From IMG/VR virus record IMGVR_UViG_3300035181_000471, positions 157,218 through 221,217 of that record: a stretch of DNA of 64,000 nucleotides; one strand, given 5' to 3'. How positions within the stretch are numbered: position 1 is the stretch's first letter; each line of letters begins with the position of its first letter. Shown here piece after piece: positions 431 through 62,155 of this stretch. The notes under the pieces were generated by a model that searched no databases, was not told the DNA's origin, and was given only the letters and a program-made list of their open reading frames with translations. The position numbers and the translations under genes were made by a program.

Positions 431-3400
431 ATGGCACTTTTCGATCAGTACACAGAACCAGGAGTCTACACCCGTGAATCGGCGGACGCTCCTGGTGTCA
501 TCCTATTCGGTGACCTTCGTATTCCTATCTTCATCGGAGAGGGAGTCGAGGAATTCACCAATAAGAATGTGACCCTCCACAGAGGTTCTAGTTCTGTGGC
601 CGATGATCTAGTGGTCAAGGAAAACATCACTGACCAGCTTTACAACGAGAGCAACATCTACAGTCCCACTCGCTCCTTCCAGCTAACTTACTTTCCTGTT
701 GTTAAGGGTGATGGAACTGGAACCACCACTTCCCAGCCTACCGACATCACCGTCCTAGCTAACGGAGTTCCAGCCGCCGTAACCTCCCTAAACGGCGTTA
801 CTGGTGAGCTAATGCTCCACGACATCTACGGTGCTGATACCACCCTAGAAGTCACCTACTACTTCAAGCGCAAGGATACTTACTTCGCTAACGAGAATGT
901 GTCTTCTCAGGTTCCTACCTTCGCTACTTGGACACAGCAGGCCAACCTCGTCCTATCGCTAACTAACCCTGGCGCTCTAGGTAACAATGTCACCCTAGCT
1001 CTAACCAAGGTCACTCCCACCTCTGATGCACTAGCTGTGTCTGGTATCGGAACTGACTCCATCTCCATCGAGCTACAGCGCACCGCTAAGGCAATTGCTG
1101 TTGGCCTACCCCTAACCTTCAATGCCGCTGGTAAGACCATCACCAGAGCTACTGGAACTTGGCCTGCTGAGGGTGTTAAGATTGGTGACTCCATCACCCT
1201 ATCCGGTTTCGGAACTTCCGCCAACAACAAGGTTGTGACTGTATCTGGTGTGACTGACACCACCCTAACTGTGGCTGAGGTTCTAACCAACGCTACCACT
1301 GAAGTTGGAACTGTCTCCCTAATCGCAGTCAGATCCCTAACTGACCTAAAGAACCTAGTTCTTTCTGGAATCACCACCCTATCTGCTGGTGACCTAACCG
1401 TTGTTTCTCTAACTTCCGGTTTCGAAAATCTAGGTGCAACCGCCGCTTCCGCCTCCTTCTCCGGTGGTGCTGGACCCTCCTCTAACACCGTCTTTAAGGT
1501 AGCCCACACTCCTATCGTAGATGGTGCCAACGGTGGTGTTGTAACTTCCAACGCCTCTAAGGTTCAGGCTACTGTGAACGGGCTACCTGCTCCTATCGTA
1601 GCTGTTGATGGTCCTAACGGCCTAGTCACTCTAGCCTCCTCCGTGGTTGCTGGACAAACTGTGCTTCTAAGCTACTACTCCAACAACTATCAGGACACCT
1701 ACGAGCTTCTACCCTCTTCCAATGTCACCAGCATCTCTAATGTCGGTTACGGTCCTGACCGTGCTGATTTCGTAAACGGTGTTGATTATGTTCTAGAGAA
1801 CCTAGCTAACGGTTCCAGCCGCATCCAGTGGGGAGCTTCTGCCTCCGTTGCTACCGGAACTTGGACTGCTGGCTTCACTCCTTTCGATGCCTCTGTAGTC
1901 ACTACCACTCTAATTGACGAGAAGGTATACATGCAGCCTGTTCAGGGTGAGGTCAATGGCAAGAACGCCATCTTCACTCTAGCTGACAGCCCTGTTGATG
2001 GTTCTGGCCTCTCCAGAACTACTAACGATCCTGCTCTAGTTCAGATCTACATCGGCGCAAACCCTGTAGCCGCTCTAGCCGCTGGTGCTGTTCGCGTCAT
2101 TCAGGTCGTCGGGGCTAACCGCACTGTCAAGCTCTACAATCCTCCTGCATCTGGAACCGTCTACGCTTCCTACTACAGAAGCGCACTAAACGACCACAGC
2201 TACACCTTAACTGTCGGAACCCCCGGAATCACCGGACAGGGAACCTACAAGATCTCCAATGAGCTAGGTGCTGTTATCGCTCCAATCGTTGCTGGTGCTT
2301 CTGCTGTAAGCGAAGCCGCAAACTTCGCTTCTACCGGAATCGTATGGCCTATCAACAACGCCCTATCCGTTCCCGACCTCTCCACCACTCCTGGTGTAAG
2401 CCCTGATGAAACCATCACTCTCACCTTCCAGGATGACAGCCTTCAGTTCACCGTAACTCCTGCTGTCCAGGCCACTGCCAAGGACACCTCTGGAGCCGGA
2501 ACCAATGCCGCCATTCAGTTCCGCACCACTACCGCTTCTTCCGCTCCTAACGGTGTTGTGACTGTAGTGCTACAGGCTGGTGCTGGCGTTGCTGACGCAG
2601 TTGCCATCACTGGTGGTGGAACCAACGCCATCGTGGTCAACATCCTAAAGAATGGTGGAACTGTCTCCAGAACCCTACAGGAGATCATCAACCTATTCGC
2701 TACTTACCCCACCAGCACCCCCCTTGGTGGATTGATCATCTGCGAAGCCGCTCCTGGATCTGGCCTAAGCCTAACCGCTAACGCTGTTCCTACCTCTGGT
2801 GGCCCCATTGCCTTCACTGGCGGTGTGACTCTTGTTCAGACCCCCTACGCTATCCGCTACAAGGTGACTTCTTCCAGAACCACCACCAACCAGACCGCTG
2901 ATGGAATGGGCCTAACTGGTGGAGTACACACTCCTTCCTACCTCAACTACTCCGGTGGTGGAACTCCTGTAGGAGCCGATGGTTACCTAGATCAGACTTA
3001 CATTGATGCCGCAACTGGTGTCAAGTTCACCATCGTCAACCCAACTGACGCTCTAAGCTTCGGTTACACTTCCCTGCCCTCCCCTTCCTACCACTACCGT
3101 CCAGGTGACACCCTAACCTTCACCGTGAACAAGGCTACTGCTCGTTATACCTCTTCTGTCCCCACCGTCAGCATCCCTGGCCTAAAGGTCAAGGTAGCCT
3201 CTACCTACGGAATGAAGGCCGCTGACACCGCAGTCATCACCACCTACAACAAGGCTGGTAATGAGCCCTCAATCGGTGACTTCTACTATGCAAGCTATAC
3301 CGTGGCTAAGAGCGAGAGTGACATGGGTCTAAAGATCTACACTAACCCTGTAGACGCTTACGCTCAGTACGGTGATCCTAACCCAACCAACAAGCTATCC

Positions 3401-4321
3401 CTAGCTACCCGCCTCTTCACTCAGAATGGTGGACAGATCTTCGGATGCATCCAGGTTGCTAAGGAAGTTGGCCTAGAGACTGCCTCTGACCAGGCTTTCA
3501 TGACCGCAATCGCTTCTCTAGCAACTCCTCTACCCGGCACTGATCGTAAGGCCGATATGATTCAGCCTCTAACCACTTCTCCAGTGGTTGTACAGTATCT
3601 AAATCGTCACCTTCTAACCCAGTCCTCTCAGCGTAACTCTGGAGAAGCCACCGCAGTTTACGGCTTCGACTACTACGCAACCCCCGACACCATGAGAAAC
3701 TCTGCCCGTTCCATTAAGTCTGATCGTATGATCGCCGTTGGAACCCCCGGAGCCATCCTAGAAATTGATGTCGCTGGTAAGACCGCTGAGTTCGCTGTCG
3801 GTGGTGAGTTCCTCGCCGCTGGTATGGTCGGAATGATGATCAACCCCGCAATTGATGTTGCTACCACTCTAACCAGACAGAACCTAGTTGGTTTCAGCCG
3901 ACTCATCAAGAGATACGATGGTCCTACTATGGATCAGATGGCCTCTGACGGTGTTACCTGCATCCAGGAGAACAACGGCGCCTTCCAGGTTCGTCACTGG
4001 ATCACCACTGATAACTCCAGCCCCCTCAAGAGAGAGCCTACTTCTCGCTTGATCGTTGACTACACTCGCAAGATCGTTCGTAGAAACCTAGATCAGTTCA
4101 TTGGTCGTAAGCTAATGCAATCCACCATGAACTCTGTCTCCATCGTAGCCTCCTCTACTCTAAAGGCCCTAGTGGAACAGGAGATCATCGAAGGCTTCAA
4201 GAATCTCGTAATCGAGAGAGATCAGGCCGATCCTACTGTTCTTCATGTGAGGTTCTCCATGAAGCCCATCTTTGCTCTGCTCTACATTGATGTGGCTCTA
4301 ACGGTCTCCACCAAGCTATAA
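431..4321 (+). CDS. contractile tail sheath protein with large inserted domains
   Basis: N-terminal Y-x-x-PGVY-T-R-E and a sheath-type C-terminus (RLIVDYTRKIVRRNLDQFIG...DPTVLHVRFSMKPIFALLYIDV). Preceded by an AGGGAG RBS; 1296 aa. Confidence 0.92.
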   Translation: MALFDQYTEPGVYTRESADAPGVILFGDLRIPIFIGEGVEEFTNKNVTLHRGSSSVADDLVVKENITDQLYNESNIYSPTRSFQLTYFPVVKGDGTGTTTSQPTDITVLANGVPAAVTSLNGVTGELMLHDIYGADTTLEVTYYFKRKDTYFANENVSSQVPTFATWTQQANLVLSLTNPGALGNNVTLALTKVTPTSDALAVSGIGTDSISIELQRTAKAIAVGLPLTFNAAGKTITRATGTWPAEGVKIGDSITLSGFGTSANNKVVTVSGVTDTTLTVAEVLTNATTEVGTVSLIAVRSLTDLKNLVLSGITTLSAGDLTVVSLTSGFENLGATAASASFSGGAGPSSNTVFKVAHTPIVDGANGGVVTSNASKVQATVNGLPAPIVAVDGPNGLVTLASSVVAGQTVLLSYYSNNYQDTYELLPSSNVTSISNVGYGPDRADFVNGVDYVLENLANGSSRIQWGASASVATGTWTAGFTPFDASVVTTTLIDEKVYMQPVQGEVNGKNAIFTLADSPVDGSGLSRTTNDPALVQIYIGANPVAALAAGAVRVIQVVGANRTVKLYNPPASGTVYASYYRSALNDHSYTLTVGTPGITGQGTYKISNELGAVIAPIVAGASAVSEAANFASTGIVWPINNALSVPDLSTTPGVSPDETITLTFQDDSLQFTVTPAVQATAKDTSGAGTNAAIQFRTTTASSAPNGVVTVVLQAGAGVADAVAITGGGTNAIVVNILKNGGTVSRTLQEIINLFATYPTSTPLGGLIICEAAPGSGLSLTANAVPTSGGPIAFTGGVTLVQTPYAIRYKVTSSRTTTNQTADGMGLTGGVHTPSYLNYSGGGTPVGADGYLDQTYIDAATGVKFTIVNPTDALSFGYTSLPSPSYHYRPGDTLTFTVNKATARYTSSVPTVSIPGLKVKVASTYGMKAADTAVITTYNKAGNEPSIGDFYYASYTVAKSESDMGLKIYTNPVDAYAQYGDPNPTNKLSLATRLFTQNGGQIFGCIQVAKEVGLETASDQAFMTAIASLATPLPGTDRKADMIQPLTTSPVVVQYLNRHLLTQSSQRNSGEATAVYGFDYYATPDTMRNSARSIKSDRMIAVGTPGAILEIDVAGKTAEFAVGGEFLAAGMVGMMINPAIDVATTLTRQNLVGFSRLIKRYDGPTMDQMASDGVTCIQENNGAFQVRHWITTDNSSPLKREPTSRLIVDYTRKIVRRNLDQFIGRKLMQSTMNSVSIVASSTLKALVEQEIIEGFKNLVIERDQADPTVLHVRFSMKPIFALLYIDVALTVSTKL

Positions 4322-7879: not shown

Positions 7880-8743
7880 ATGCCAATCAACAAAACCGCA
7901 ACAGCCGTGTTAACTGACCCAATCTATTCTTTGAATGATTGGAACAAGCTTCATGGGCCAAAAGCCTTCGGCCAGAAGACCGCAGGCTTCAGCAAATTTG
8001 CTGGCAATACCTCCAAGTATCTTCTTTCGCATGTCACCATCATGTCTTCTGTCATGACTGAGAACGAGCCTGATGACTACCTCATCAAGCCTGAGTGTTC
8101 TTATCTAGTCAACCAGAATGAAGATGGTTGGGAAAACGAAGTTCTCAAGATGTCCTACAGATCCTTCGTAGGAGCTTTTAACTTCCTTGAACACATGCAG
8201 AACAGAAAGCAATCCAAAGGTCACATTATCGACTCCGTTCTCAGAAAGATCAGCATCACTGGGGATGTCTGGGTCTATTTCGTAGATCTCTTGGTTGCAA
8301 CTGACCTAGCTCACGAAAAGCTTGTGAGTCAGATCAGAAATGGCGAAGTAAAATATCTCTCGATGGGATGTGTCACCGATCTAGTTATCTGCTCATATTG
8401 TGGACACAGAGTTACTGAGGATGGAAATTACTGCAACCACCTATCATACAATAAGGGGCAGTTCATCCCTGACGACGATGGTGTGTCTAGAAGAGTGGCC
8501 GAGCTTTGTGGTCACAAATCCCTACCCAACGGTGGCGTAAAGTTCGTTGAAGCCTCATGGGTAGAGATTCCCGCTTTCCCTGGAGCCGCTGTAAGAGAAA
8601 TCATTGCAGACTCTTGGGAGGGTCCAAAGACCGCTTACACCAAAGACGCAGAAGAGCTAGGAAGGCGTAAAGCCGCATCTTCATTGATTCTACCCGGAGC
8701 CGATGCTACTGATGCCGCCTTTAATAGATTGCTTATGAGGTAA
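7880..8743 (+). CDS. prohead (capsid maturation) protease with Zn-binding insert
   Basis: NFLEH...SKGHIIDS, KYLSMGC, CSYCG...CNH insert, and FVEASWVEIPAFPGA. This is the assemblin/HK97-type protease pattern, and the gene sits directly upstream of scaffold and capsid. Confidence 0.85.
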   Translation: MPINKTATAVLTDPIYSLNDWNKLHGPKAFGQKTAGFSKFAGNTSKYLLSHVTIMSSVMTENEPDDYLIKPECSYLVNQNEDGWENEVLKMSYRSFVGAFNFLEHMQNRKQSKGHIIDSVLRKISITGDVWVYFVDLLVATDLAHEKLVSQIRNGEVKYLSMGCVTDLVICSYCGHRVTEDGNYCNHLSYNKGQFIPDDDGVSRRVAELCGHKSLPNGGVKFVEASWVEIPAFPGAAVREIIADSWEGPKTAYTKDAEELGRRKAASSLILPGADATDAAFNRLLMR

Positions 8744-10822: not shown

Positions 10823-11728
10823 ATGGCTACTCTATCCCGCACCCAAGCACAGACCGCTCAGCTAGGTCAGATCCTAAAGACCGCCGCTGGCCGTCAGAAA
10901 CTTGCCGCCGCTCTCGGACCTTCGCTCCGTAGACGCCGCGACTATATGTCCATCGCTCGTAAGGCCCTCATGGTTGAAACACTACCTGATGGCGCACTAC
11001 CAATCTACGACAAGGAATTCGATGAAACTGGTCGTTCCTTCGTTGAAGCATTCGTAGTAGGTGAGCAGGGTGGCGACATCGTGAAGTTGGCTAACCCCCT
11101 TCGCGTAACCGTCCCCACCTTCGAAATCGCCTCCAACCCAATGATTCCTATCACTCAGATCAAGGAGCGTAGATTCGACATCGTTTCTCGCGCCCTAAAT
11201 CTAGCAAAGGCTGAAATTGGCGCTGCTGAAGATGGTTTCGTGTTCAACCTCTTCGATACGATTGCTACTGCTGCCAACGGCAAGGCTACCAGCGATCCTA
11301 TCTACAATGTGAACTACCCCCTATCTGGTAGCATCACTCCTGATGCTATGGCCGATCTATTCGGACAGGTCCAGAGACATGACAACTCCGTTGCCTATGT
11401 ATTCGTCAATCCCCGCGATTACACTGACTTCCTCAAGTGGCATGACTCCACCCTAGACCGTGAGACCCAGAGACACCTACTCAAGACTGGTATCATGGGC
11501 TACCTCTGGGGCGCAACCGTCCTACAGAGCAGAAAAGTGGGCTACGGCTCAGTTTATGTCCTAGCTGACGCTGAGTTCCTAGGCGTAATTCCTGAGAGAG
11601 TTCCTCTCACAGTGCTTTCTGCTGATCGCCCTGACCTCCGTCAGATCGGTTTCAGCGTCTTCGAAATCGCTGGATTCCTCGTCTTCAACCCCTCTGGCGT
11701 TCAGAAGATGATCGTAACTCGTCCCTAA
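10823..11728 (+). CDS. major capsid protein (HK97 fold)
   Basis: RDYMSIARKALMVETLPDGALPIYD, VPTFEIASNPMIPITQIKERRFDIV...AEDG, GIMGYLWGATV, and C-terminal GFSVFEIAGFLVFNPSGV. Strong RBS and a downstream terminator. Confidence 0.9.
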   Translation: MATLSRTQAQTAQLGQILKTAAGRQKLAAALGPSLRRRRDYMSIARKALMVETLPDGALPIYDKEFDETGRSFVEAFVVGEQGGDIVKLANPLRVTVPTFEIASNPMIPITQIKERRFDIVSRALNLAKAEIGAAEDGFVFNLFDTIATAANGKATSDPIYNVNYPLSGSITPDAMADLFGQVQRHDNSVAYVFVNPRDYTDFLKWHDSTLDRETQRHLLKTGIMGYLWGATVLQSRKVGYGSVYVLADAEFLGVIPERVPLTVLSADRPDLRQIGFSVFEIAGFLVFNPSGVQKMIVTRP

Positions 11729-13727: not shown

Positions 13728-13925
13728 ATGGCTAAAATTGCCGCTACAGATAACACCGCTATGAACAAGCTCTTCGCCCTTGAAGCCACCAAAGCTGGCA
13801 GTAAGGTCGCCGCTGGAGATGTTCAGGCATTCGAAGATCACAAGGACTATGTATCCACCCTAGAGTCCATCCTCAGCGATGACAAGAAGACCTCTTGGTC
13901 CCCCAACGATCTTCTACTAGACTAA
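13728..13925 (+). CDS. small K-x-A-motif protein
   Basis: 65 aa, AAGGAG RBS, late motif at 13687-13707; MAKIAA and SKVAAG. Confidence 0.65.
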   Translation: MAKIAATDNTAMNKLFALEATKAGSKVAAGDVQAFEDHKDYVSTLESILSDDKKTSWSPNDLLLD

Positions 13926-13940
13926 AGATACGAGGTTCAA

Positions 13941-16253
13941 ATGACTCGTAATCTTCTAGATGCCCTGATTACGGCAACATCCGAGGTCTCCGTGAAAACT
14001 GGTTATTTACAGCCAGGGGATATGGCCGTTGCCGCTAACGGTAAGGCTTTCGTGGTTACCGCTTCTCGTTCTATGGGTAAAAAGAACACCTACAAAGTCG
14101 CCTTTGAAGACGGCACTGAGGTTCCCCTAGAAGGCGATGGAGTGATGACTTTTGAAGACATGGGCGCAGAGAATTCTCCCATGGAAAAACTTTCAACGCT
14201 GCATAAACTGGCGTTGAATCCTGACTTTGATCTTTATGTAAAAACCTCCATCTCGGACCACAACCTCCCAATTGATGAAGATGTCAATTGGGCTAAGTGG
14301 CTTGAAGCTACCTACAGAATGATGGTGGCTCCAACTAACGATGAAGTGAGAGATGAAGCCATTCACCATATGCTTATCGAAAATCTATTCAGGTACGATG
14401 CCCTGGCTAGGTTCGATGCTTCAAGACTCCCTGCCTCTATTCAAGCCCTGCCAGTTGAGAAGCAAGTGTCTTCTTACCTGAAGGGTTATTTCCTTAAGCA
14501 GAGATCTGACTGCGTTGAGTGGGTCAAAAAGACTTACGCAACGGGTAAAGAAATGCTCGTCATGGACGATGCTGACGGTAGCGAAGCCTTCATTAACAGC
14601 CCTGAATACTCCGAGGCCGATTCTGGTTTTGAGGGCTCCATCTCTAAGATGGACACAGAGAAATTCAGAAAGTCCTTCCTGCACTTCCTAGAGAATGGTG
14701 CTGGGCTAACCCACAAGAAAACAAAAGAGAAGGTTGCACTTCTTCTCAACTTGATCCTAGACACTCCTGCTACCAAGCCTGGAGAGATTATTCAACGACT
14801 CGCTGATCAAGCTGAGGTGTCGCACTCCACAGCTACCAAGCTATTCTTCACTACGCTTCCTCCTCTAATTGAAAAGTTTATGAAGACTCCTGAGGGTGCT
14901 TCATTGAACAGTGAGAAACAACCCTCTGTAGCTAAGCATTCTAATTTGGAGGACTCCTCGATGCGTAAATCCCGTTTTGCAAAAAGTAAGCAAGCTGAAG
15001 CTGATAAATGCCCTCAGTGCGGCCAGAATCTAGTAAATGGAATCTGCCCTACCTGTAAGGACAAGGCTGACAAGGCCGCTAAGGAACAGTCCAAGGCTCT
15101 AAATACCCAGCAACAGCCTGAAAAGACTGGTCCCCAGGTCAAGTCTTACGGCTCCGTAACCGCTGGTAACAAGGCAGCTAGAACTGAAGGAACCCCTTCT
15201 GCATGGTCCGTAGATAACAATAGAGTTCTACCCTCCAAGGACGGTGAACCCGAAGGTCCAAAGATCAAGATCAAGGCTTCTACTGATAAGTATGCCACCT
15301 TCCGTCACCTAGCTGAAGAGGAGGCTCCCGCAATTTCTGAGGCTCTAGTAGAACTTTCTCAGGCTTTCGCTACTCTAGCTGAAGCTTCTGAAGCTCTAGT
15401 AGAGAATCTAGACCTAGCCCCTATTCCCGAAGAGGGCTCTATTAAGGATAAGGTCGCTTCTCGCAAGAAGTTCGCATCCACCCTTAAGAAGCTAGCCGAA
15501 GAAGCACCTGATAAGGTTGAAGAGGCCGTCAAGGAACTTTACAGTTCTCTAGATGAGATCGCTTCGGCTATGGAAAATCTAGCTTCTAACCTAGGTATTG
15601 ATCTAGTCAGTGAAGAATCTGAGTTGGATGAAGAAGTCCATGATGAGCTAGCTGATACCCATGACACTGAAGAAGTTGTTGAAGAAGTTGACAACTCTGA
15701 AGTGCCTGAGGATGTTCAGATTGATGGTGCCGATGCTCCTGCTATCCTGGATGAGTTTGTCGGTGAGAACAAAAAGAGCAAAGAAGCAATTAAGAAGCTT
15801 CACACTGAAAAAGGGAAAGAAATTGAGTACGGTCCTGGTGGAAAGGTAAAATGCCCTTACTGCAATACCTGGAAGAAGGCTCAGGAACCTTGCCCTAACT
15901 GTGGTAATAAAGAAGCCTCTCTACGCGAGAGAATCATGGCCCGTAGAGCCGCCAGAACTAAGACCGCCGCTCAAGTAGTCTGCAATACCGAGTCTGGTGG
16001 CGTGTGGACCAAGTATGAAGCTGGGGATGATGAAGCCATTATGAAGGCTTGTGAGGGTACCAAGTGGTCCCTTTGTGACCCAAGAATGGCCGCTGAGTAT
16101 CTAGCTAAAGGTCCTCTATTCATCTTGTCTGAAGGCCCCGAATCCTTCGCTGTGTATGATCCCACCAGAGACATCATTTACGATGTGGATGATGCCGAGA
16201 CTGACTTCTTTGATGAGGAACTAGCAGAACTAAAAACCTGCCTAGGCCAGTAA
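13941..16253 (+). CDS. multidomain polyprotein: SH3/KOW-like, sigma-factor-like, zinc ribbons, helical repeat, WC-type domain
   Basis: 770 aa; segments separated by KLA, KQA, KFA, KEA and KTA motifs (see findings). Confidence 0.6.
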   Translation: MTRNLLDALITATSEVSVKTGYLQPGDMAVAANGKAFVVTASRSMGKKNTYKVAFEDGTEVPLEGDGVMTFEDMGAENSPMEKLSTLHKLALNPDFDLYVKTSISDHNLPIDEDVNWAKWLEATYRMMVAPTNDEVRDEAIHHMLIENLFRYDALARFDASRLPASIQALPVEKQVSSYLKGYFLKQRSDCVEWVKKTYATGKEMLVMDDADGSEAFINSPEYSEADSGFEGSISKMDTEKFRKSFLHFLENGAGLTHKKTKEKVALLLNLILDTPATKPGEIIQRLADQAEVSHSTATKLFFTTLPPLIEKFMKTPEGASLNSEKQPSVAKHSNLEDSSMRKSRFAKSKQAEADKCPQCGQNLVNGICPTCKDKADKAAKEQSKALNTQQQPEKTGPQVKSYGSVTAGNKAARTEGTPSAWSVDNNRVLPSKDGEPEGPKIKIKASTDKYATFRHLAEEEAPAISEALVELSQAFATLAEASEALVENLDLAPIPEEGSIKDKVASRKKFASTLKKLAEEAPDKVEEAVKELYSSLDEIASAMENLASNLGIDLVSEESELDEEVHDELADTHDTEEVVEEVDNSEVPEDVQIDGADAPAILDEFVGENKKSKEAIKKLHTEKGKEIEYGPGGKVKCPYCNTWKKAQEPCPNCGNKEASLRERIMARRAARTKTAAQVVCNTESGGVWTKYEAGDDEAIMKACEGTKWSLCDPRMAAEYLAKGPLFILSEGPESFAVYDPTRDIIYDVDDAETDFFDEELAELKTCLGQ

Positions 16254-16272: not shown

Positions 16273-16307
16273 AACTTCGGGGATTGAATAAGTCCCTGAA
16301 GTTTTTT
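16273..16307 (+). terminator. intrinsic terminator
   Basis: AACTTCGGGGA / TCCCTGAAGTT stem followed by a T run. Confidence 0.8.
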
Positions 16308-16368
16308 GTTTAAAAATAAGTATCAATAGATGAGCGAGTAGTTAACTTGCAAGAACGAGGTATACTTA

Positions 16369-16983
16369 ATGGCGTCACCTGATGTGGGGATTTACGGGAT
16401 AGAGAATACGATAACTGACAAATGGTATATCGGATCTTCGGTTGAACTTAGTAAGAGGTTCAGTAGGCATCTATGGGAGTTGAGGTCTGGTAGACACCAC
16501 TCCGACAAGCTTCAAAGATCATTCGATAAGCATGGTGTTAAGGCATTTGATTTCAAGTTACTAATGGTCTGCTCCAAAGAGGATCTTGAGTTCTATGAGT
16601 CGAGAGCAATCAAGGCTTATAGGGGGTTTACCGATGGCTATAATGTCGCGGCTGAGGCTAAGGGGGGATTTATGCGAGGTCGTAATTGGCCCGAAGCTAC
16701 CAAGGCCGCTAGGATTGAAGAGATGAAGACGCGCAGAATGACAGAGGAACAAAAGACAAAAATCTCTGAGCTTAAAAAGGCTGAGTGGTCTAACCCAGAA
16801 ATTCACGAAGCTAGATCAGCGAGTATGCGTAAGCCCAAGAGTAAAGAGGGTGCCGCTAACATTGCCGCCGCCTCATTGAAACGCTTGCGTGACCCAGATC
16901 CGGCTCAAGTTGAAGCTAGGCGTCAGAACTTACTTAAGGGCTGGGAAACCAGGAGAAATAATAAAAGACAAGGGAGTCTTTAA
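16369..16983 (+). mobile_element. free-standing GIY-YIG homing endonuclease
   Basis: GIYGIEN...WYIGSS..LSKRFSRH...LQRSFDKHG..AF...E...GYN, followed by a basic NUMOD-like C-terminus. Confidence 0.88.
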
Positions 16984-17717
16984 TGGCTGAGAACTCGCCG
17001 TACTTCGAGTCAATTGTAGCTGATAGAGCATTACTATTAGATCCAGAAGACTACCAGGGTGACCACACCCTTTCCCTAGAAACCCAAGCCGACATCGTAG
17101 CGCAAGACATAGCGTCTTACATCTTCGAAAATTTTAGAGACTTTTTAAAGATCCTTAAATTTCTCTCACCAGAAGATCAGGAACTTTTACTCGGCTATTA
17201 CATCCTATCCAAAACCCAGTGGAGTTTAGCCAGAATTCACAATTCCACTCAAACCATCTGTAGCTTTAAACTTCGACTCGCCGTAAAAAAGCTCGGGACT
17301 TACATGCTCCTTGGAGTGCCAACGGCAGAGAAGATTAACGAGATCCTAGAGAAGTTTGGTAGAACGAATTTCAATGAAGAGGTCCGACTCGCTGACCTAA
17401 TCGACTACTACGCCAAGACTCGTTCGTTTAAAACCGTTGCCTCCCATTTCAAGGTCAAGAGACCTGATGTGAGAAGGGCTATGAGTAGTCTTGCTAAGGA
17501 ACTGATGGATCAGAGAGACATTCACATGATGGCCTTGGGTGCTTTCGTATTCGGATTAATCGACAAAGCATCGGCTCAAGGCAAGGGTTTATCGGCCAGA
17601 GAGAAGGCAAAAATTTGTCCCATCTATCGCAGAGACCCACCCATTCTAGGGGAATTCCAAGTCAATGTTCAGGATTCCGACTTTGAGCATCTCTTAGTAA
17701 CCAAGGCTAATTATTAG
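16983..17717 (+). CDS. sigma-70 region-4-like / double HTH DNA-binding protein
   Basis: LKFLSPEDQELLLGYYILSKTQWSLARIHNSTQTICSFKLRLAVKKL resembles sigma region 4; second HTH-like segment RSFKTVASHFKVKRPDVRRAM. Confidence 0.6.
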   Translation: MAENSPYFESIVADRALLLDPEDYQGDHTLSLETQADIVAQDIASYIFENFRDFLKILKFLSPEDQELLLGYYILSKTQWSLARIHNSTQTICSFKLRLAVKKLGTYMLLGVPTAEKINEILEKFGRTNFNEEVRLADLIDYYAKTRSFKTVASHFKVKRPDVRRAMSSLAKELMDQRDIHMMALGAFVFGLIDKASAQGKGLSAREKAKICPIYRRDPPILGEFQVNVQDSDFEHLLVTKANY

Positions 17718-31046: not shown

Positions 31047-34000
31047 ATGGCCTTAACGCTAACCCCCATCATTCTCTCTGAACAAAACAGAGTTTTTCCT
31101 TTAACCTCAGAATCTACAGGGGTTACGATTCGATTAGCCACTGGCAGTTCCGGTGAAATTGGAACTATCAAGGTGGAGGGGTTCGCTCCTCCTATCGCAA
31201 ATCTGGATTGGAGCATCTATCAGAACCCTTCTTGGGTCACTCTAGAGGTAGATTCCTCCGACCCATCCTTGGTCCATCTCCGCTACACCAACGCTACTCC
31301 AAATCCTCAGGGCCTGCACCAATTCTTCGTAAGTGTTAATGATGGAAACTCTATCATTAGGTACCCTATTGCTATTGATGTCAAGAAGCCTTTCTACCTA
31401 TCCGTGTTATCTCCTAGGACTGACACCATTGATCTAAGAGCTTATGACGCCGGAACTGCTGTCACCACTATTAAAGCATACGGTCAGTCTGATAGGGAGA
31501 TTACCTCTGGTGATGTGTGTTTCCTACCTCCTGTCCTTCCTGACGGTTTGGAGTTCCTAACGGGTCTCGGCAATGAGGCAGTAATCCAGGTAGCCCAACC
31601 TTCCGCTTCCGATGCCTCTGGTGGTGTAAAGGTTGTAACTCCTTACTCCCAGGTCATTCAGGTTCAGGCTTACCAGCCTGGATCAATGTATGACATTCCT
31701 AATGATCCTGTCAGAACTTATACAAAGAACATCACCCTCAATGTCAATACCTCGCTACCCGGAACCTTCGGGTCTGCTGTAACTTGCTCTTACGATGACA
31801 CCAACAATTACTTCGTGCTAAAGGCTGTTACTTCCTTTGCGCTAGGCGAACCTAAGGCACTAACCTACGCTTGGTCTGCCACTGGGACCGGAACCGGAGT
31901 AATGACCGGAGCTACCACTGACACAATGCACTTTGCTCCTAATGTTGCCTCGGGAGCCGTCACTTTCCACCTAGATATTAAGGACGCCAATAACGGCAAT
32001 GTGCTTCTACAGCACTACGATATTGGACCCATGAATGTTTGCAACGCTGGATCTGACGGAGCAACCTGGGAGGCTAACAACGCCTTGAAGCTCTGGGCCA
32101 CTGCTCCAGTTGTATCCGGTGCTGCTGGAGAACCTGTGTCTATCACCATCGCTGGTGATCCTGGTGTAGCTAGCGTGGTAGTTTCGTTCTCTGTGTCAGG
32201 AAGTGGAATCACCGCTCCAGGCAACATCACCCTTCTAAACGGTGTACCACAGACCCTCATCCTCAATGTCCCAGGTGGAGCCACCAACAAACAGAAGTGG
32301 ACCCTTACCGCTAATGGAACATCCGGGTCTGCTACTGGGCAAGCTAGGGTTGTTATTGAAAGTGCCGGAACTCCCGCTCTTTTGGTATCCGCCTCTAATT
32401 CTTCTATCGTCCAGGACACCGGGAGCCTAATCAACCCATCCATAATGACTGCCGCTTACCCAACCCTAAGCACGGTTATTCCAGGCGTGGACTTCTATCT
32501 AGTGAACGCTCCTGCTGGGTTGAAGCTAGGGCAGGACGGGGTTATCACTGGTGGATCGCTTTTCAATACAGTAGATGATTCTGCTTTCTCCTTCAAGGTC
32601 ATGGCTGTCAAGCCTGGGTACTCACCTAGCTACTTGAACATGACCCTAGATGTCACTACAAGTGCAACACCTATCGAGTTCAGCAAGTTCTTCTCTTCTG
32701 TCACCAACACCACGGACAATTCCCCATTCACTCTTTCCTGGCGCTACCCTGAGACTACCGCCTCCCTATGGCTTCAGAAGAATGTAGAAGCTCCCGTAGA
32801 GGTTGTTTCCAATGCCTCTGCTACCGTAGTCGGGGACTCACTATTCTCCCTAACCGGAACTAACTTCTACGGAACCGCTTACTCTACACCTTTGGTTGTC
32901 ATCTCCGACACCGCCGCGAATCTGACCAAGCTCCCTTCTGCAAAGACTTCGGCTGTCATCGACATGAATAACAAGATGACAATCAAGTGGAGTCCTGATC
33001 CAATCAATAACCTCTACAATCTCTACAAGGGATGGTCGATCACCTACAAGAAAAATGGTGGGTCTGTTCTAGCTCTACCTAACGCTGACACCATCATCAC
33101 TGGACTAGAGGACGCCACTGGAACTCTCTCTACCAGAGTGTTCTCCTATCAGATGGGTCCAGACAACATCGCTCTATCCATGAAGGCTTTGTCTGCCAAT
33201 CGTGTAGCCATCGGAGATTCCGATGCTTGGAGTCACCTCCTAGACTTCCCACCTGTCCTAACCCCCACCACCTTCACCCTGGACAAGACTACTGCCAAAC
33301 TAGGGGAGCCTGTAACTATCTCTATGGACAGCGGCTACATTGGTGGATCTGCTTGGAGAGTTCGTTACGCAGAGGGTAAGGCTACTGAGTGGCTACCTAC
33401 CTCTTTGAAGACCAGCACTCATGTCTTTACTACTCCTGGACCTCAGACCATCACTATCGAAATCGAGTCTGATTTCTCCGTAGAAAAGCCTCCTGTCTCT
33501 CTACAAAGAACTATGACTCTTTCTCTATTTGTAGAGGATGAGCAGTTCCTAGTCAGCAATGCTAATGCAAGTGTTATAGGTAACATCGGTATAGGTGGAG
33601 CAGAAGGATTTGAAGTCACCGATTCCTCCTCTGGAACCTACAGCAGAGAGCCTTACGAAGTCATCACTAGATCCATTGTTAAGGATGAGCAAACTCAGGA
33701 AGTCAAACTCCTCATCGCCACTTCCAGAAACAACAACGCCTCCTCTGCTCTAGGAACTATGGCTCTCGATGTCTTCCCAATCCAGGGTAGACCTCATATG
33801 AAGAACCTAGTTCTTCCAGCACTAAACCTAAACGGTAACACTGGGCTTGTTTCTTCTGTAAAGATCGTTTCTGAGTCGCTGCCTGACGCCGTAGTCGGAA
33901 AGCCTATGCCTGAAACCCAGCTTCAGGTATCTGGTGGAACTGCACCTTACGACTGGTATTCCAGCAATCTACCTCAGGGTCTAGTCCTCAACACTGACGG

Positions 34001-37000
34001 CACCCTATCTGGAACCCCAATGCTGATGGGTGTTTACACCATTGACTTCTCTGTCAAGGACTCCACTTCTCCTGCATACATCGACAGCAGAACTCTAGTC
34101 TTCTCTGTAAAGAGCGACATCGCAATCAGCGAGGTTTCTGCTCCTACCGCTAAGGTCGGAACTTTCTACTCTCACACCATCGCTTCCTTGGGTGGCCTAG
34201 CCCCATTCTCTTGGAGACTTGCTAACGGTGAGCTACCAATCGGTCTAAGCATCGAACCTTCTTCTGGTAAGATCCTAGGTCTACCCTGCACCTACAATTC
34301 TACTACTGACTTCACAAAGAACTTCCTCTTCACTCCTGAAGTTACTGACTCCATTGGAGCAAAGGCATCCAAGCAACTCTATATGTCTCTAGCCCCTGCC
34401 GATCTAACACTAGGTAGCATGGATCAGTCGATCATCTACAAGGATGAGGATGCCAAGTTTGCCATCCCTGTTTACGGTGGACAATCCCCTTACCATCTCG
34501 CTTCCTTCACCTCTGATGGAACAATTGGTAGTGATCTGACCCTCAAGACTCCTGAAGTCATTAACGCTGTATCCGAACTAACTCCTAGTCTCCTAGTGAT
34601 CACCACTGGGGACCAGATCTTCAACCCACAGGGAACTCCTGTAGCTGGTGTCTACCCAACTCCTTACAATGTTTCGTTCTCCGTAGATGTTGCTGGTGGA
34701 GTCCCAGGTTACAGACTTTCTATTGACACTTCCAACCCTAGCTTAAACACTCTACCTAACGCTGATATCATCGGTAATGTGGTAACTGGAACTGTCACCG
34801 CAGATGGTCACTACACTGTGAACATCAAGGTTGTGGATTCTGATGGATTCGGAGTCTCTTACTCCAAGGTTATCAGAGTAACCACCAACGACAACAGCAC
34901 TGAAGCCTACTCCACCACTCTTGAGTTTGTAGGTGTAAAGAAGAACGGTTCTAACAACACTGCCACCTGGACCTTCAGAAAACTATCCGCTCTACCCAAC
35001 ATCCTGAAGGATGTCCCCTACAAGAACCTCGCTGACACCGCTGAATTCTATGGTCTAGCCCTCTGGGACAACGATCTAAATCAGCCAGCACAGGCTCTAG
35101 CTCTCCCAATCACCGCTGGTAAGCTAAGCACCTCCGTACAGGGTGGTGCAGAGGGTCAGTATGCCGCTCTAGGTATCTCAGCTTTTACACCTTCTTGGAC
35201 CATCACCACTGAAGGAACTGGCGTATTCAATGTCGCTGGGTCTCTACCAATCGGCTACGGAACCTCTGGAACTGCCTCTGGACCTTACGCATTCTTCCTC
35301 TTTGCAGACAGCACCGCAGGGGCAGGAATCCCAGTCATAAACCAGAAGATCTCCAAGGTCACTGACCCTACCTTCGGAATCCTAAGCGACTACCAGATTG
35401 GAACCATCACCCTCTACTCTGTAACTGGTGACCCTCTCTACTCTAAGTCCATGTTCATCTACTGCTCTGACTCTGGAGACAACACTACTTCTACTCCTGT
35501 AGTCGAGGTCACTTCTACCAGAACTCAAACCATTGAAGGCGACATCTACGATCCTCTCTCTGCCACCTACAATAGCTCTGAGGCTCGTCACTTTGAGTAT
35601 CCACTAACTGCCGCCTCTGGTGCCGCTCCCTATGTCTTCACCGTTAAAGATGGTTCCACCCTACCTGGAGCTTCAATCGGCGTAGCTAACGGGGTTCCTA
35701 CACTAATGGTCCCCAGCACTTCACCAATATACACTGGAACCACCTCAGCCTCTTATGTGGCTTATGTAGCCGCTACAGATAAGAATGGCATTGTGTCTCA
35801 GACAGCCACCATCAATGTCAACTATGTCCCCAAGACCGCCTCTACTAACCCAGTTCAGATTGTGGGTGTCACCTATCTCCAGGACATCGCAGTCACCGAT
35901 CCGACCTTCCGTGGTTATACTGGTGCCGATCTAGGTGTTCTAGACATGATGATGTGGGCTAACCAGGATGTCACTTGGAGCCTACCTCCTTCCGAGAAGG
36001 CAGATCACGAATCTCATGGAATCGTGTTCATCACCAAGCCTGACAACTCCTTCCAGATTGCTGGAACTCCCAATGTTGCTCAGAGATACATTTTCAATGT
36101 CACCGCAACCGCTGTGGGCGCTGGGTCTGATACTCGCGTGGTCTACCTAGACATCGTTGATCCTATCGTCACTATCCAAGGACCAACCTCTCCTCTAACC
36201 CTAAACGCCAAGTATAACTATGCCACCAACCACTCTGTAATGAAGGTGAGCATCGAAGGGTACAAGGTCGGAACTTGCCCTGTGGTTCTAGTCACTAACT
36301 TGGGAACCTTGAACCCCGTTCCAACCAATGTCAACATTACCAGTGACATGGGAATGGGTCATCTCGGAAACCCTGCTTACGCTCAGAAATGGGATGCCTA
36401 CTATGACTTCTCTACCACCGTATCCGGTGCTGGAGTTCTAACCACTACTGGTGGGGTTGCAACCACTCCTTACCCCTTCTCTGCTGCCGCTACAACTCTC
36501 GTGGCAAAGGGAATTGTCCAGCCTGTAGTCCATGTGTCTGAATACGCTACCACCTTCCTACCTGCTCCTCCTCTCACCATCACTGGCGGAACTGCACCTT
36601 ACACCTACACCGTATCCTCCATTTCAAACCCAACTAACTTCACTATCTCAGGTGGGCAGCTTGCCATGCTAATGAATAGCGTATCTCCGACTAACCAGCC
36701 TGGAGCTTGTGATGTCACCTACACCGTAACCGATAGCTCTACTCCTACTCAGACTGTTGTCTCTACCGCAGGAAATGTCAGTGTCATCGTAGATGCTGAA
36801 AGCTACATCTCTGCTGCCTTCCCCACAAAGGAATGGGTCTACACCGCAGGAGCATCCACCTTCCCACTCTATCAGGTCATCCAACCTAAGTTGGGTCACA
36901 AGCCTTATCAGTGGACCATCACTAGCGTTGATTTCTCTGCTATTAGCGGGGGCATGACCGGACTAGTCCACAAGTCTAGCACCAACAGCATTCTATCCAT

Positions 37001-37232
37001 CAACACCAGCACTTCGGACTATAGCATCAAGGACTTCACCAGCACCGATGTTCTATACGAAACCACTCCTGGAACTTGGGTAGCCACTCCAACTGGATTG
37101 CTATACTCCCACGCTTGGTCCTCTATCGTCCCAACCCCAGGCCGCTATGTAATCCCCATTGGCGTCACCATCACCGATGCCAAGGGAATCTCAGTCGCCG
37201 GAACCACTTCTGTTACCCTGATTGTTCCTTAA
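31047..37232 (+). CDS. giant Ig-like (putative Ig/He_PIG, PKD) repeat virion fibre protein
   Basis: 2061 aa with repeated GGxAPYxW...LPxGLxL...G.LSGTP units and a PKD-like STHVFTTPG. Confidence 0.75.
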   Translation: MALTLTPIILSEQNRVFPLTSESTGVTIRLATGSSGEIGTIKVEGFAPPIANLDWSIYQNPSWVTLEVDSSDPSLVHLRYTNATPNPQGLHQFFVSVNDGNSIIRYPIAIDVKKPFYLSVLSPRTDTIDLRAYDAGTAVTTIKAYGQSDREITSGDVCFLPPVLPDGLEFLTGLGNEAVIQVAQPSASDASGGVKVVTPYSQVIQVQAYQPGSMYDIPNDPVRTYTKNITLNVNTSLPGTFGSAVTCSYDDTNNYFVLKAVTSFALGEPKALTYAWSATGTGTGVMTGATTDTMHFAPNVASGAVTFHLDIKDANNGNVLLQHYDIGPMNVCNAGSDGATWEANNALKLWATAPVVSGAAGEPVSITIAGDPGVASVVVSFSVSGSGITAPGNITLLNGVPQTLILNVPGGATNKQKWTLTANGTSGSATGQARVVIESAGTPALLVSASNSSIVQDTGSLINPSIMTAAYPTLSTVIPGVDFYLVNAPAGLKLGQDGVITGGSLFNTVDDSAFSFKVMAVKPGYSPSYLNMTLDVTTSATPIEFSKFFSSVTNTTDNSPFTLSWRYPETTASLWLQKNVEAPVEVVSNASATVVGDSLFSLTGTNFYGTAYSTPLVVISDTAANLTKLPSAKTSAVIDMNNKMTIKWSPDPINNLYNLYKGWSITYKKNGGSVLALPNADTIITGLEDATGTLSTRVFSYQMGPDNIALSMKALSANRVAIGDSDAWSHLLDFPPVLTPTTFTLDKTTAKLGEPVTISMDSGYIGGSAWRVRYAEGKATEWLPTSLKTSTHVFTTPGPQTITIEIESDFSVEKPPVSLQRTMTLSLFVEDEQFLVSNANASVIGNIGIGGAEGFEVTDSSSGTYSREPYEVITRSIVKDEQTQEVKLLIATSRNNNASSALGTMALDVFPIQGRPHMKNLVLPALNLNGNTGLVSSVKIVSESLPDAVVGKPMPETQLQVSGGTAPYDWYSSNLPQGLVLNTDGTLSGTPMLMGVYTIDFSVKDSTSPAYIDSRTLVFSVKSDIAISEVSAPTAKVGTFYSHTIASLGGLAPFSWRLANGELPIGLSIEPSSGKILGLPCTYNSTTDFTKNFLFTPEVTDSIGAKASKQLYMSLAPADLTLGSMDQSIIYKDEDAKFAIPVYGGQSPYHLASFTSDGTIGSDLTLKTPEVINAVSELTPSLLVITTGDQIFNPQGTPVAGVYPTPYNVSFSVDVAGGVPGYRLSIDTSNPSLNTLPNADIIGNVVTGTVTADGHYTVNIKVVDSDGFGVSYSKVIRVTTNDNSTEAYSTTLEFVGVKKNGSNNTATWTFRKLSALPNILKDVPYKNLADTAEFYGLALWDNDLNQPAQALALPITAGKLSTSVQGGAEGQYAALGISAFTPSWTITTEGTGVFNVAGSLPIGYGTSGTASGPYAFFLFADSTAGAGIPVINQKISKVTDPTFGILSDYQIGTITLYSVTGDPLYSKSMFIYCSDSGDNTTSTPVVEVTSTRTQTIEGDIYDPLSATYNSSEARHFEYPLTAASGAAPYVFTVKDGSTLPGASIGVANGVPTLMVPSTSPIYTGTTSASYVAYVAATDKNGIVSQTATINVNYVPKTASTNPVQIVGVTYLQDIAVTDPTFRGYTGADLGVLDMMMWANQDVTWSLPPSEKADHESHGIVFITKPDNSFQIAGTPNVAQRYIFNVTATAVGAGSDTRVVYLDIVDPIVTIQGPTSPLTLNAKYNYATNHSVMKVSIEGYKVGTCPVVLVTNLGTLNPVPTNVNITSDMGMGHLGNPAYAQKWDAYYDFSTTVSGAGVLTTTGGVATTPYPFSAAATTLVAKGIVQPVVHVSEYATTFLPAPPLTITGGTAPYTYTVSSISNPTNFTISGGQLAMLMNSVSPTNQPGACDVTYTVTDSSTPTQTVVSTAGNVSVIVDAESYISAAFPTKEWVYTAGASTFPLYQVIQPKLGHKPYQWTITSVDFSAISGGMTGLVHKSSTNSILSINTSTSDYSIKDFTSTDVLYETTPGTWVATPTGLLYSHAWSSIVPTPGRYVIPIGVTITDAKGISVAGTTSVTLIVP

Positions 37233-37272
37233 TAAAATAATCAGGTTTCTGCTCCTATATTGAGGATCATAG

Positions 37273-57350: not shown

Positions 57351-57393
57351 CCAAAAATACAAACTTTCAGTATTGTTGTATACTGGAGTGTTT

Positions 57394-61630: not shown

Positions 61631-61712
61631 GAGATCCGTTGACATTGTGATCGCCTGCATTATGGTTGGCTGGAACTTTCTAGTATGATCCTGGAGATCC
61701 CCCAGTATAATA
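61608..61712 (+). promoter_or_regulatory. repeated early promoter/operator module, copy 1
   Basis: TCCGTTGACATTGTGATCGCCTGCATTATG ... GATCCCCCAGTATAAT upstream of ORF 61732. Confidence 0.6.
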
Positions 61713-61731
61713 GGAGTGGAGGGATATACCT

Positions 61732-62047: not shown

Positions 62048-62138
62048 TCACCTTCAACTCCGTTGACATTGTGATCGCCTGCATTATGCCACAATCTTTC
62101 AATCCCCTGGTGTGATCCTAGTGATCCCCAGTATAATA
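62048..62138 (+). promoter_or_regulatory. repeated early promoter/operator module, copy 2
   Basis: Identical 30-mer at 62059-62088 and GATCCCCAGTATAAT upstream of ORF 62156. Confidence 0.6.
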
Positions 62139-62155
62139 TGGTGAAGGGAATATCT

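What the first reader, a model, noticed from the sequence alone, without database searches (positions are those of the whole stretch)
14214..14885. Sigma-factor-like domain embedded in a late polyprotein: possible virion-delivered sigma
Seen: between HKLA and KSRFAKSKQA the 770-aa protein has a ~225-aa segment. It reads DEVRDEAIHHMLIENLFRYDALARFD...VSSYLKGYFLKQRSDCVEWVKK, then an acidic linker, then EKVALLLNLIL...IQRLADQAEVSHSTATKLF...LIEKF. Established: ECF/sigma-70 proteins have region 2 (D..Q....l...FD....f.tYl......d..R), an acidic linker and a region 4 HTH. Inference: this is a divergent sigma-like factor, expressed late, excised at K-x-A sites and injected to redirect host RNA polymerase to early phage promoters such as the CAGTATAAT modules at 61.7 and 62.1 kb. 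The match is by eye and distant.
Basis: partly seen in the sequence, partly recalled or inferred. Interest (0 to 1): 0.8.

Follow-up and report, generated by a model that had tools for sequence, protein, structure and literature searches.

The report
Possible sigma-like module in phage head-cluster protein
A conserved two-domain helical module in a large head-cluster protein of an uncultured jumbo phage faintly resembles a bacterial sigma factor, but no test reaches significance and nothing shows it is cut out, packaged or injected.

Summary
Residues ~81-324 are a real, conserved module. A profile of it finds 140 cluster representatives, almost always near the N-terminus of 300-1900-aa proteins with variable C-termini. 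The only cultured carrier is the jumbo phage Tunturi_5 (gp345).

AlphaFold2 with 73 sequences (pLDDT 82) gives a helical N-domain, a disordered acidic linker and a four-helix HTH-like C-domain. That is the layout of an ECF sigma factor.

Evidence that it is sigma-related is consistent but always sub-threshold:
- Language-model neighbours of the N-domain are mostly Sigma70_r2 clusters.
- Eight of the 50 best Foldseek BFVD hits are phage sigma factors, but all have E >= 0.3.
Nominal P is 0.005-0.08 and shuffle P is 0.05-0.10.
- Pfam, PHROGs, NCBIfam and PDB sequence searches give only scattered noise-level hits.

The K-x-A excision sites are not supported. Packaging and injection are untested. 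The CAGTATAAT modules look like ordinary host-type -10 promoters.

Verdict: a new phage protein family with a plausible but unproven sigma-like module.

The parts
13941..16253 (+). 770-aa multidomain ORF that carries the module. It is the last gene of a tightly spaced five-gene unit (about 11.8-16.3 kb) downstream of the major capsid gene.
   Evidence: ORF; 11 homologues; conserved synteny.
13941..14177 (+). N-terminal domain of about 79 aa that precedes the module. It is recognisable in at least 50 of 148 collected family proteins.
   Evidence: hmmsearch of the aa 1-79 profile against collected family members; alignment A1.
14181..14543 (+). Helical N-domain of the module (aa 81-201).
   Evidence: AF2 pLDDT >90 for aa 100-200; column conservation; ESM Atlas on this part gives 68 of the 100 best named clusters as Sigma70_r2; hhalign register versus sigma2 at P 0.005-0.04, not significant against shuffles.
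14544..14645 (+). Disordered acidic linker (aa 202-235).
   Evidence: pLDDT <50; net charge -8 here and median -10 over 73 family members.
14646..14912 (+). Helical C-domain (aa 236-324). Four main helices of 14, 16, 12 and 20 aa with a three-residue turn before the last, which is HTH-like. F246 is nearly invariant.
   Evidence: AF2; local Foldseek hits to homeodomains with TM 0.57 over 60 aa; hhalign places it on sigma region 4 in register, P 0.07-0.3.
14991..15080 (+). First zinc ribbon (aa 351-380, CPQC...CPTC).
   Evidence: Pfam DZR E 0.006, below cut-off; cysteine pairs conserved in close homologues.
15258..15620 (+). Helical 'mid' module (aa 440-560). It is the best-conserved part of the protein between distant relatives and is present in at least 67 of 148 family proteins.
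   Evidence: tblastn 34% identity to Tunturi_5 gp345; near-invariant columns in A1; hmmsearch.
15837..15911 (+). Second zinc ribbon (aa 633-657), inside an insertion found only in the window protein and P0001.
   Evidence: Pfam Zn_ribbon_6 E 0.026; alignment A1 columns 750-795.
15933..16250 (+). C-terminal domain (aa 665-770), shared only with the closest relatives.
   Evidence: hmmsearch finds it in 7 of 148 family proteins; A1.
16273..16313 (+). Intrinsic-terminator-like hairpin (13-bp stem plus T run), starting 20 nt after the stop codon.
13728..13925 (+). 65-aa gene immediately upstream. A 65-67-aa gene holds the same position in every relative examined.
16983..17717 (+). Conserved 244-aa syntenic neighbour with sigma-region-4-like HTH features. 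It is separated from the 770-aa gene here by a GIY-YIG homing endonuclease (16369-16983).
   Evidence: 49% identity to Tunturi_5 gp346; in ESM Atlas all ten best family-bearing hits share the Sigma70_r4/UPF0122 family or clan; Pfam gives only Phage_antitermQ at E 1e-4.

Best explanation
Residues ~81-324 of the 770-aa protein are a self-contained helical module. It has a bundle domain, a ~35-aa acidic disordered linker and a four-helix HTH-like domain, which is the architecture of a group-4 (ECF-type) sigma factor. The module is the defining, usually N-terminal, unit of an undescribed family of large multidomain proteins. These are encoded in the head-gene cluster of Tunturi_5-like jumbo myophages. 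I think it most likely acts as an RNA-polymerase- and/or DNA-binding unit of a late-made protein. The much better conserved mid module (aa 440-560) probably ties the protein to the particle or its assembly. Shown: the module, its domain layout, its family, its gene context, and its fast divergence relative to capsid genes. Inferred: the sigma-like fold, any contact with RNA polymerase, particle association, and the time of expression.
For: Architecture: the AF2 model from 73 sequences has pLDDT 81.6 and pTM 0.61, with two confident helical domains and a disordered linker. The linker is acidic across the family. Sigma signal from unbiased searches: the ESM Atlas on the N-domain alone returns Sigma70_r2 clusters for 68 of the 100 best named hits, plus 18 more named sigma region 2, at score 0.94. 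The whole module also retrieves Sigma70_r2 and r4_2 clusters. Foldseek BFVD has 8 phage sigma factors and one TFIIB among its top 50. Foldseek PDB has FliA, SigD, sigma70 and TFIIB among its top 30. hhalign gives the same colinear sigma2-then-sigma4 register against E. coli sigmas, 43 viral/E. coli sigmas and an ECF set that includes the phage clade's own sigma. Sporadic member-level hits are to Sigma70_r2, Sigma70_r3, phrog_1740 (sigma) and TIGR02989. Modularity: the module stands at roughly aa 60-330 of proteins from 300 to 1936 aa. In one contig it is a complete stand-alone 301-aa gene (P0016). Context: it lies downstream of the capsid (69% identity to Tunturi_5) and maturation protease (60%) genes. 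The module itself is only about 17% identical to its Tunturi_5 counterpart, which suits a host-facing rather than a shell-building part.
Against: No test is significant. Foldseek gives E >= 0.47 and TM 0.13-0.23 for every sigma hit. hhalign probability is 1-8%, and 5-10% of block-shuffled sigma profiles score as well. Pfam, PHROGs and NCBIfam hits appear in only 1-2 of 73 members at E 0.04-0.1. PDB profile searches find no sigma. A sigma HMM does not single out this segment among the window's ORFs. The Atlas warns that its calibration does not cover parts of proteins, and the number of shared features is low (about 100 of 256). The family's most conserved residues (P110, D112, W117, F246) lie outside the helices equated with sigma regions 2.2-2.4, which are the most conserved parts of true sigmas. 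A 15-20-residue insertion must be assumed between the two main 'sigma2' helices. Tunturi_5 already encodes a canonical ECF sigma.
Confidence: 0.4

Rival explanations
1. The module is a helical assembly or structural domain with no relation to sigma factors, for example a capsid-interior, scaffold-like or portal-associated part of a head protein. On this view the sigma resemblance is the generic look of two small helical domains joined by a linker.
For: All sigma-directed statistics are at chance level. The top Foldseek hits also include cyclins, TFIIB, de novo helical designs and GPCRs, which is typical noise for all-helical queries. The gene sits among head genes, and Phold labelled the Tunturi_5 homologue a virion structural protein. 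The strongest conservation is in a non-sigma motif. A coiled-coil-like mid region gives a weak SbcC-like PHROG hit.
Against: The module diverges far faster than the capsid, the protease and the neighbouring 244-aa protein. It is combined with very different C-termini. Both points are unusual for a shell-contacting structural domain. The domain-specific Atlas result (r2 for the N-domain, HTH/r4 for the rest) is hard to put down to generic helicity.
Confidence: 0.3
2. The protein is a late polyprotein, and the sigma-like fragment is excised at K-x-A sites, packed in the head and injected. It then directs host RNA polymerase to early promoters such as the CAGTATAAT modules.
For: There is a sigma-like layout and weak sigma signals. 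The gene lies in the head cluster. A head maturation protease homologue is present at 7880-8743. A gene homologous to one that Phold calls DarB-like (an injected P1 head protein) lies four genes downstream. The module can exist as a separate 301-aa protein. Two copies of one promoter-like module end in CAGTATAAT.
Against: HKLA lies within the first conserved helix of the module. The downstream K-x-A is not conserved in distant members. No cleavage motif, proteomics or N-terminal data exist. TATAAT is the host sigma70 -10 consensus, so these promoters need no new sigma. No precedent turned up in the literature searches: the virion-delivered transcription proteins those papers name are RNA polymerases (N4, phiKZ), not sigma factors.
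Confidence: 0.08
3. It is an intracellular late-transcription or DNA-handling factor that is not packaged. It would work with the adjacent conserved 244-aa HTH protein, either as an alternative initiation-factor pair or in genome packaging.
For: The 244-aa neighbour is syntenic in every relative and has sigma-region-4-like features. Two zinc ribbons follow the module, and these are common in transcription and DNA-binding factors. The clade relies on host RNA polymerase plus phage sigmas; Tunturi_5 gp211 is a true ECF sigma.
Against: The similarity of the neighbour to sigma4 is also sub-threshold. A 770-1900-aa size with variable C-terminal additions is atypical for initiation factors. No shared late-promoter motif was found upstream of the structural genes.
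Confidence: 0.15

Closest known systems
Group 4 (ECF) sigma70-family factors, e.g. E. coli RpoE and Tunturi_5 gp211
   Same: Both have a helical bundle, a flexible linker and a four-helix HTH domain, in that order. The sizes are comparable: about 245 aa here, and 191 aa (RpoE) and 232 aa (gp211) for the ECF sigmas compared. hhalign consistently places 'DEAIH..L' on the region 2.2 helix (DLIQE/DIIQE), 'FD' on the conserved F-D/F-G turn, 'T.YL' on 'F.TW/YA', and the last two helices on the region 4.2 HTH.
   Different: No significant sequence or structure match was found. There is an extra N-terminal helix pair carrying the family's own invariant LPVD..NW motif, and a 15-20-aa insertion between the two main helices. 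The linker is long and strongly acidic. The module is embedded in a 770-aa protein encoded among head genes.
TFIIB / cyclin-fold initiation factors
   Same: These are the top-ranked Foldseek PDB hits (7egb_R, 1c9b_A, 3h4c, 8s5n_M), and a Marseillevirus TFIIB appears in BFVD. They are also two tandem helical domains, and a zinc ribbon is present in the same protein.
   Different: E is 0.6-1.7 and TM 0.13-0.22. The zinc ribbon here follows the helical domains instead of preceding them.
Virion-packaged multidomain ('polyvalent') phage proteins such as P1 DarB (Iyer et al. 2017, PMC5512222; 2021, PMC7824862)
   Same: They are large multidomain proteins with a conserved unit plus variable additions. 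The gene sits in a morphogenesis cluster, and a gene homologous to one that Phold labels DarB-like lies four genes downstream. One long family member carries a DMP19-like domain.
   Different: No MuF/SPP1 gp7 anchor or enzymatic domain was recognised. There is no proteomic evidence of packaging.
Minimal and divergent phage sigma-like factors (single-HTH sigmas of group 2 jumbo phages, T4 gp33/gp55, phiKZ gp68), as reviewed in PMC7824862
   Same: They are precedents for phage initiation factors too divergent for Pfam sigma models.
   Different: Those are small dedicated proteins encoded outside head clusters.

Membership tests
sigma70 family | Significant match to the Sigma70_r2 profile (PF04542 or equivalent) | tested here: not met
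   There is no hit for the window segment. One of 73 family members hits at E 0.054, two of 73 hit phrog_1740 at E 0.044, and one of 73 hits TIGR02989 at E 0.1. hhalign P is 0.005-0.04, and 5-9% of shuffled profiles score as well.
sigma70 family | Significant match to region 4 (PF04545 / PF08281) | tested here: not met
   None of the 73 members hits these models. hhalign aligns the C-domain to region 4 in register, but only at P 0.07-0.3.
sigma70 family | Fold of sigma2 and sigma4 domains (structure match) | tested here: inconclusive
   Foldseek finds no match with E < 0.3. Sigma factors are nevertheless enriched among the best hits: 8 of 50 in BFVD, and FliA, SigD and sigma70 in PDB. TM is 0.13-0.23 over whole-length alignments. 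Domain-wise superposition could not be run.
sigma70 family | Domain order: sigma2, then flexible linker, then sigma4 HTH | tested here: met
   The AF2 model shows a helical domain, a disordered linker and a four-helix HTH-like domain. The hhalign alignments are colinear. This feature alone is not specific to sigma factors.
sigma70 family | Highest conservation in regions 2.2-2.4 and 4.2 | tested here: not met
   The most conserved columns are P110, D112, W117 and F246, which lie outside those helices. The 'DEAIH' helix is only 71-85% conserved.
sigma70 family | Binds core RNA polymerase and confers promoter-specific initiation | not testable with these tools
   This needs pull-down and in vitro transcription experiments.
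Prohead-protease-processed head polyprotein | Conserved cleavage motif at domain borders | tested here: not met
   HKLA (aa 88-91) is inside the first helix of the conserved module. The K-x-A after aa 335 is absent from P0008-P0011.
Prohead-protease-processed head polyprotein | A maturation protease is encoded by the phage | tested here: met
   Window 7880-8743 is 60% identical to Tunturi_5 gp331, which is annotated as head maturation protease by Phold. This is annotation-level evidence only; Pfam gave no hit.
Virion-packaged / injected phage protein | Detected in purified particles | not testable with these tools
   The only isolate, Tunturi_5, has no virion proteomics. Its 'virion structural protein' label comes from Phold.
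Virion-packaged / injected phage protein | Encoded within the head or morphogenesis gene cluster | tested here: met
   The order sheath - protease - capsid - ... - this gene is conserved in the window, L001-L003, the P0006 contig and Tunturi_5.

The most novel reading that the evidence does not exclude
A clade of jumbo phages packs a sigma-like initiation or RNA-polymerase-binding module into the head as part of a multidomain protein and delivers it with the DNA. Host RNA polymerase would then be captured or reprogrammed before any phage gene is expressed.
Probability: 0.1. Interest if true: 0.85.

Novelty: new variant of a known kind. Interest (0 to 1): 0.45.

Why it matters
If the module really is sigma-like, it would be a strongly diverged initiation-factor fold fused into a head-cluster protein. 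Together with packaging, that would make it a new way for a phage to take over host transcription at the moment of entry. Until now that role is known for packaged RNA polymerases (N4, phiKZ) and modifying enzymes (T4 Alt), not for sigma-type factors.

Even if it is not sigma-like, the work defines an undescribed and sizeable protein family: 140 representatives at 50% identity and no Pfam model. The family marks a poorly known jumbo-phage clade whose one cultured member, Tunturi_5, makes the question directly testable.

Tried and rejected
- **Family libraries on the segment and 73 members.** Pfam, PHROGs and NCBIfam gave no usable hit.
- **PDB sequence-profile searches.** They returned only chance-level hits: SopA, FliS, fructose bisphosphatase and a 14-aa motif of a Thermus phage decoration protein.
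- **Foldseek.** Searches of a shallow and a deep AF2 model against PDB and BFVD found nothing at E < 0.3.
- **hhalign against three sigma profiles.** These were 6 E. coli sigmas, 43 viral plus E. coli sigmas from 80 fetched loci, and 11 ECF sigmas including Tunturi_5 gp211. The register was always the same and never significant. Block-shuffle nulls gave 5/100 and 18-20/200.
- **Sigma HMM against all window ORFs.** The segment does not stand out, and no canonical sigma lies in the window.
- **Pfam on five of the longest family members.** This was a search for cargo domains; only one DMP19-like hit appeared.
- **tblastn against isolated phages.** Only Tunturi_5 matched, and megablast found nothing.
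- **Search for a shared late-promoter motif.** No motif was found in the intergenic regions of the structural module.
- **Internal start at M237.** This was suggested by a 534-aa gene call (P0002). It was rejected because no Shine-Dalgarno sequence lies upstream.
- **Charge of the putative recognition helix and domains.** This does not discriminate.
- **Source names for homologues.** None exist.
- **Sequencing runs.** Only DNA runs from sediment and microbial-mat metagenomes hold the gene, so expression could not be examined.
- **One failed call.** The search for related loci with the six-sigma alignment failed for lack of a conserved stretch.
Full report
**What is there.** The window is a structural-gene region of an uncultured jumbo myophage.
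- A 1296-aa tail sheath gene lies at 431-4321.
- A head maturation protease homologue lies at 7880-8743, and the major capsid gene at 10823-11728. They are 60% and 69% identical to gp331 and gp334 of Tunturiibacter phage Tunturi_5, a 309-kb isolate.
- Related contigs reach 227-240 kb.
- The window DNA is held by sediment and microbial-mat metagenomes.
- The finding lies in ORF 13941-16253 (+), 770 aa. This is the last gene of a closely spaced unit that starts after a terminator behind the capsid gene and ends at a strong terminator at 16273-16303.

**The module is real and defines a family.**
- A word-indexed search found 11 homologues, and their alignment shows that aa ~81-335 is conserved.
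- A profile of this stretch, searched against 1.8 billion representatives, found 140 proteins, 130 of them below E 1e-10.
- In nearly all of them the module sits at about residues 60-330, in proteins of 300 to 1936 aa.
- Profiles of the other parts show a recurrent ~79-aa N-terminal domain (at least 50 of 148) and a recurrent helical 'mid' module (aa 440-560, at least 67 of 148). The zinc ribbons and the C-terminal domain are confined to close relatives.
- Tunturi_5 gp345 is a member (hhalign probability 99.6%) and shares the gene order 66-aa gene / family gene / 244-aa gene / ....
- In one contig the module is a complete, separate 301-aa gene (P0016), so it can work as a unit of its own.
- None of the homologues looked up carries a name from its source database.
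- The 'virion structural protein' label of gp345 comes from Phold structure matching, not from proteomics.

**Anatomy.**
- With 73 sequences, AlphaFold2 gives mean pLDDT 81.6 and pTM 0.61.
- The helical N-domain (aa 92-201) has pLDDT mostly above 90.
- The linker (aa 202-235) is disordered. Its net charge is -8 here, with a median of -10 over the family.
- The helical C-domain (aa 236-324) has four main helices of 14, 16, 12 and 20 residues, with a three-residue turn before the last. That is an HTH-like arrangement.
- The best local Foldseek matches of the C-domain are homeodomains, with TM 0.57 over 60 residues.

**Evidence pointing towards sigma.**
- The ESM Atlas, given the N-domain alone, returns Sigma70_r2 clusters for 68 of the 100 nearest named clusters, plus 18 more named sigma region 2, at score 0.94.
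- Given the whole module, the Atlas returns Sigma70_r2, Sigma70_r4_2 and HTH clusters.
- Foldseek against BFVD lists eight phage sigma factors and one TFIIB among its 50 best.
- Foldseek against PDB lists TFIIB, cyclins, FliA, SigD and sigma70.
- hhalign always produces the same colinear alignment. 'DEAIH..L' falls on the region 2.2 helix, 'FD' on the following turn, 'T.YL' on the region 2.3 aromatic stretch, and the last helices on the region 4.2 HTH. This held against six E. coli sigmas, a 43-sequence viral plus E. coli profile built from loci, and an ECF profile built around Tunturi_5 gp211.

**Evidence against sigma.**
- All Foldseek E-values are at or above 0.3, and TM-scores for sigma hits are 0.13-0.23.
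- hhalign probabilities are 1-8%. Block-shuffled sigma profiles reach the real score in 5 of 100 and 18-20 of 200 trials.
- Across 73 members, Pfam, PHROGs and NCBIfam give one or two sigma hits each at E 0.04-0.1, among dozens of unrelated hits.
- PDB profile searches find no sigma.
- A plain sigma HMM does not pick this segment out of the window's ORFs.
- The family's most conserved residues (P110, D112, W117 in an LPVD..NW loop, and F246) lie outside the helices equated with sigma 2.2-2.4.
- A 15-20-residue insertion has to be assumed between the two main helices.

My reading is that a sigma-like fold is plausible, at roughly 40%, because independent and unbiased methods converge on the same family in a domain-specific way. 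Homology is not demonstrated.

- 'HKLA' (aa 88-91) lies inside the first helix of the conserved module, not at a border.
- The downstream 'K-x-A' is conserved only in close relatives and is absent in P0008-P0011.
- A protease homologue exists, but no cleavage motif can be derived. 'Polyprotein' therefore remains an assumption.
- Packaging is suggested only by position among head genes and by a downstream gene whose Tunturi_5 homologue Phold calls DarB-like.
- CAGTATAAT occurs three times against 0.34 expected. The sites at 61703 and 62129 are two copies of one ~85-bp module, and the third is unrelated.
- These modules carry the host-type TATAAT -10, so they give no reason to invoke a new sigma.
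- Tunturi_5 has a canonical ECF sigma, gp211 (Sigma70_r2 E 2e-11), and a second Phold-called sigma, gp3. The clade therefore already has ordinary means of redirecting host polymerase.
- The literature searches found no packaged sigma factor. The delivered transcription proteins named in those papers are RNA polymerases.

**Evolutionary behaviour.**
- Between the window phage and Tunturi_5, identity is 69% for the capsid protein, 60% for the protease and 49% for the 244-aa neighbour.
- It is 34% for the mid module of this protein and about 17% for the sigma-like module.
- Fast divergence, together with variable C-terminal additions, suits a host-facing part better than a shell component. The conserved mid module is the better candidate for contact with the particle. 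This is inference.

**Verdict.** Its statistical basis as a sigma match is at chance level. What is firmly new is an undescribed protein family of a little-known jumbo-phage clade. Tunturi_5 offers a cultured system in which virion proteomics and RNA-polymerase binding could settle the question.

Noticed in passing
window 16983-17717 (+): This 244-aa protein is the syntenic neighbour of the 770-aa gene in every relative and is 49% identical to Tunturi_5 gp346. That protein is annotated 'exonuclease' by Phold, which is probably wrong. It has two sigma-region-4-like HTH stretches. In the ESM Atlas all ten best family-bearing hits share the Sigma70_r4/UPF0122 family or clan, while Pfam gives only Phage_antitermQ at E 1e-4 and hhalign versus sigma gives P 0.016. 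It could be a small-terminase-like or transcription factor.
   Followed up: partly
window 16369-16983 (+): A GIY-YIG homing endonuclease (phrog_314, E 2e-30) is inserted between the 770-aa gene and its 244-aa neighbour. It is present in L001-L003 but absent at this place in Tunturi_5 and in the P0006 contig. A second homing-endonuclease-like ORF lies at 57322-58500.
   Followed up: partly
window 14265-14306 (aa 109-122 of the 770-aa protein): The family's most conserved motif, LPVD..(M)NW.KW, closely resembles FPMDPDVNWAQWF (residues 32-45) of the auxiliary (decoration) protein in the Thermus phage capsid structure 6i9e. The E-value is 1.1-1.7, so this is at chance level, but it is a striking short match.
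   Followed up: no
window 61643-61730 and 62069-62156 (+): These are two copies of one ~85-bp module that starts TTGTGATCGCCTGCATTATG and ends CCCCAGTATAAT. They lie in a 1.5-kb stretch without ORFs of 120 aa or more and look like repeated host-type promoters. The third CAGTATAAT, at 56413, is unrelated sequence inside an ORF.
   Followed up: partly
window 15771-15920 (aa ~611-660): The second zinc ribbon lies in an insertion of about 45 aa that is present only in the window protein and its 85%-identical relative P0001.
   Followed up: no
window 7880-8743 (+): This 287-aa protein is 60% identical to Tunturi_5 gp331, the Phold 'head maturation protease'. It carries a CxxC...C..H cluster and has no Pfam hit (it was not searched in PHROGs), so it may be an unusual protease family.
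   Followed up: partly
window 40933-43140 (+) and 31047-40923 (+): The 735-aa protein has a pretoxin HINT domain (E 7e-5, below the Pfam cut-off). The 2061-aa and 1216-aa neighbours carry He_PIG Ig-like repeats, so they are probably fibre or baseplate proteins.
   Followed up: no
P0016 contig (ENA ERZ1426851, no DNA available): In this relative the sigma-like module is a complete 301-aa gene, followed 18 nt later by a separate ORF in another frame. This is either a natural split of the multidomain protein or a frameshift.
   Followed up: partly
window 14649 (M237): A 534-aa gene call identical to the window protein (P0002) starts at M237, exactly at the start of the C-domain. No Shine-Dalgarno sequence lies upstream, so it is probably a gene-calling artefact.
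   Followed up: yes
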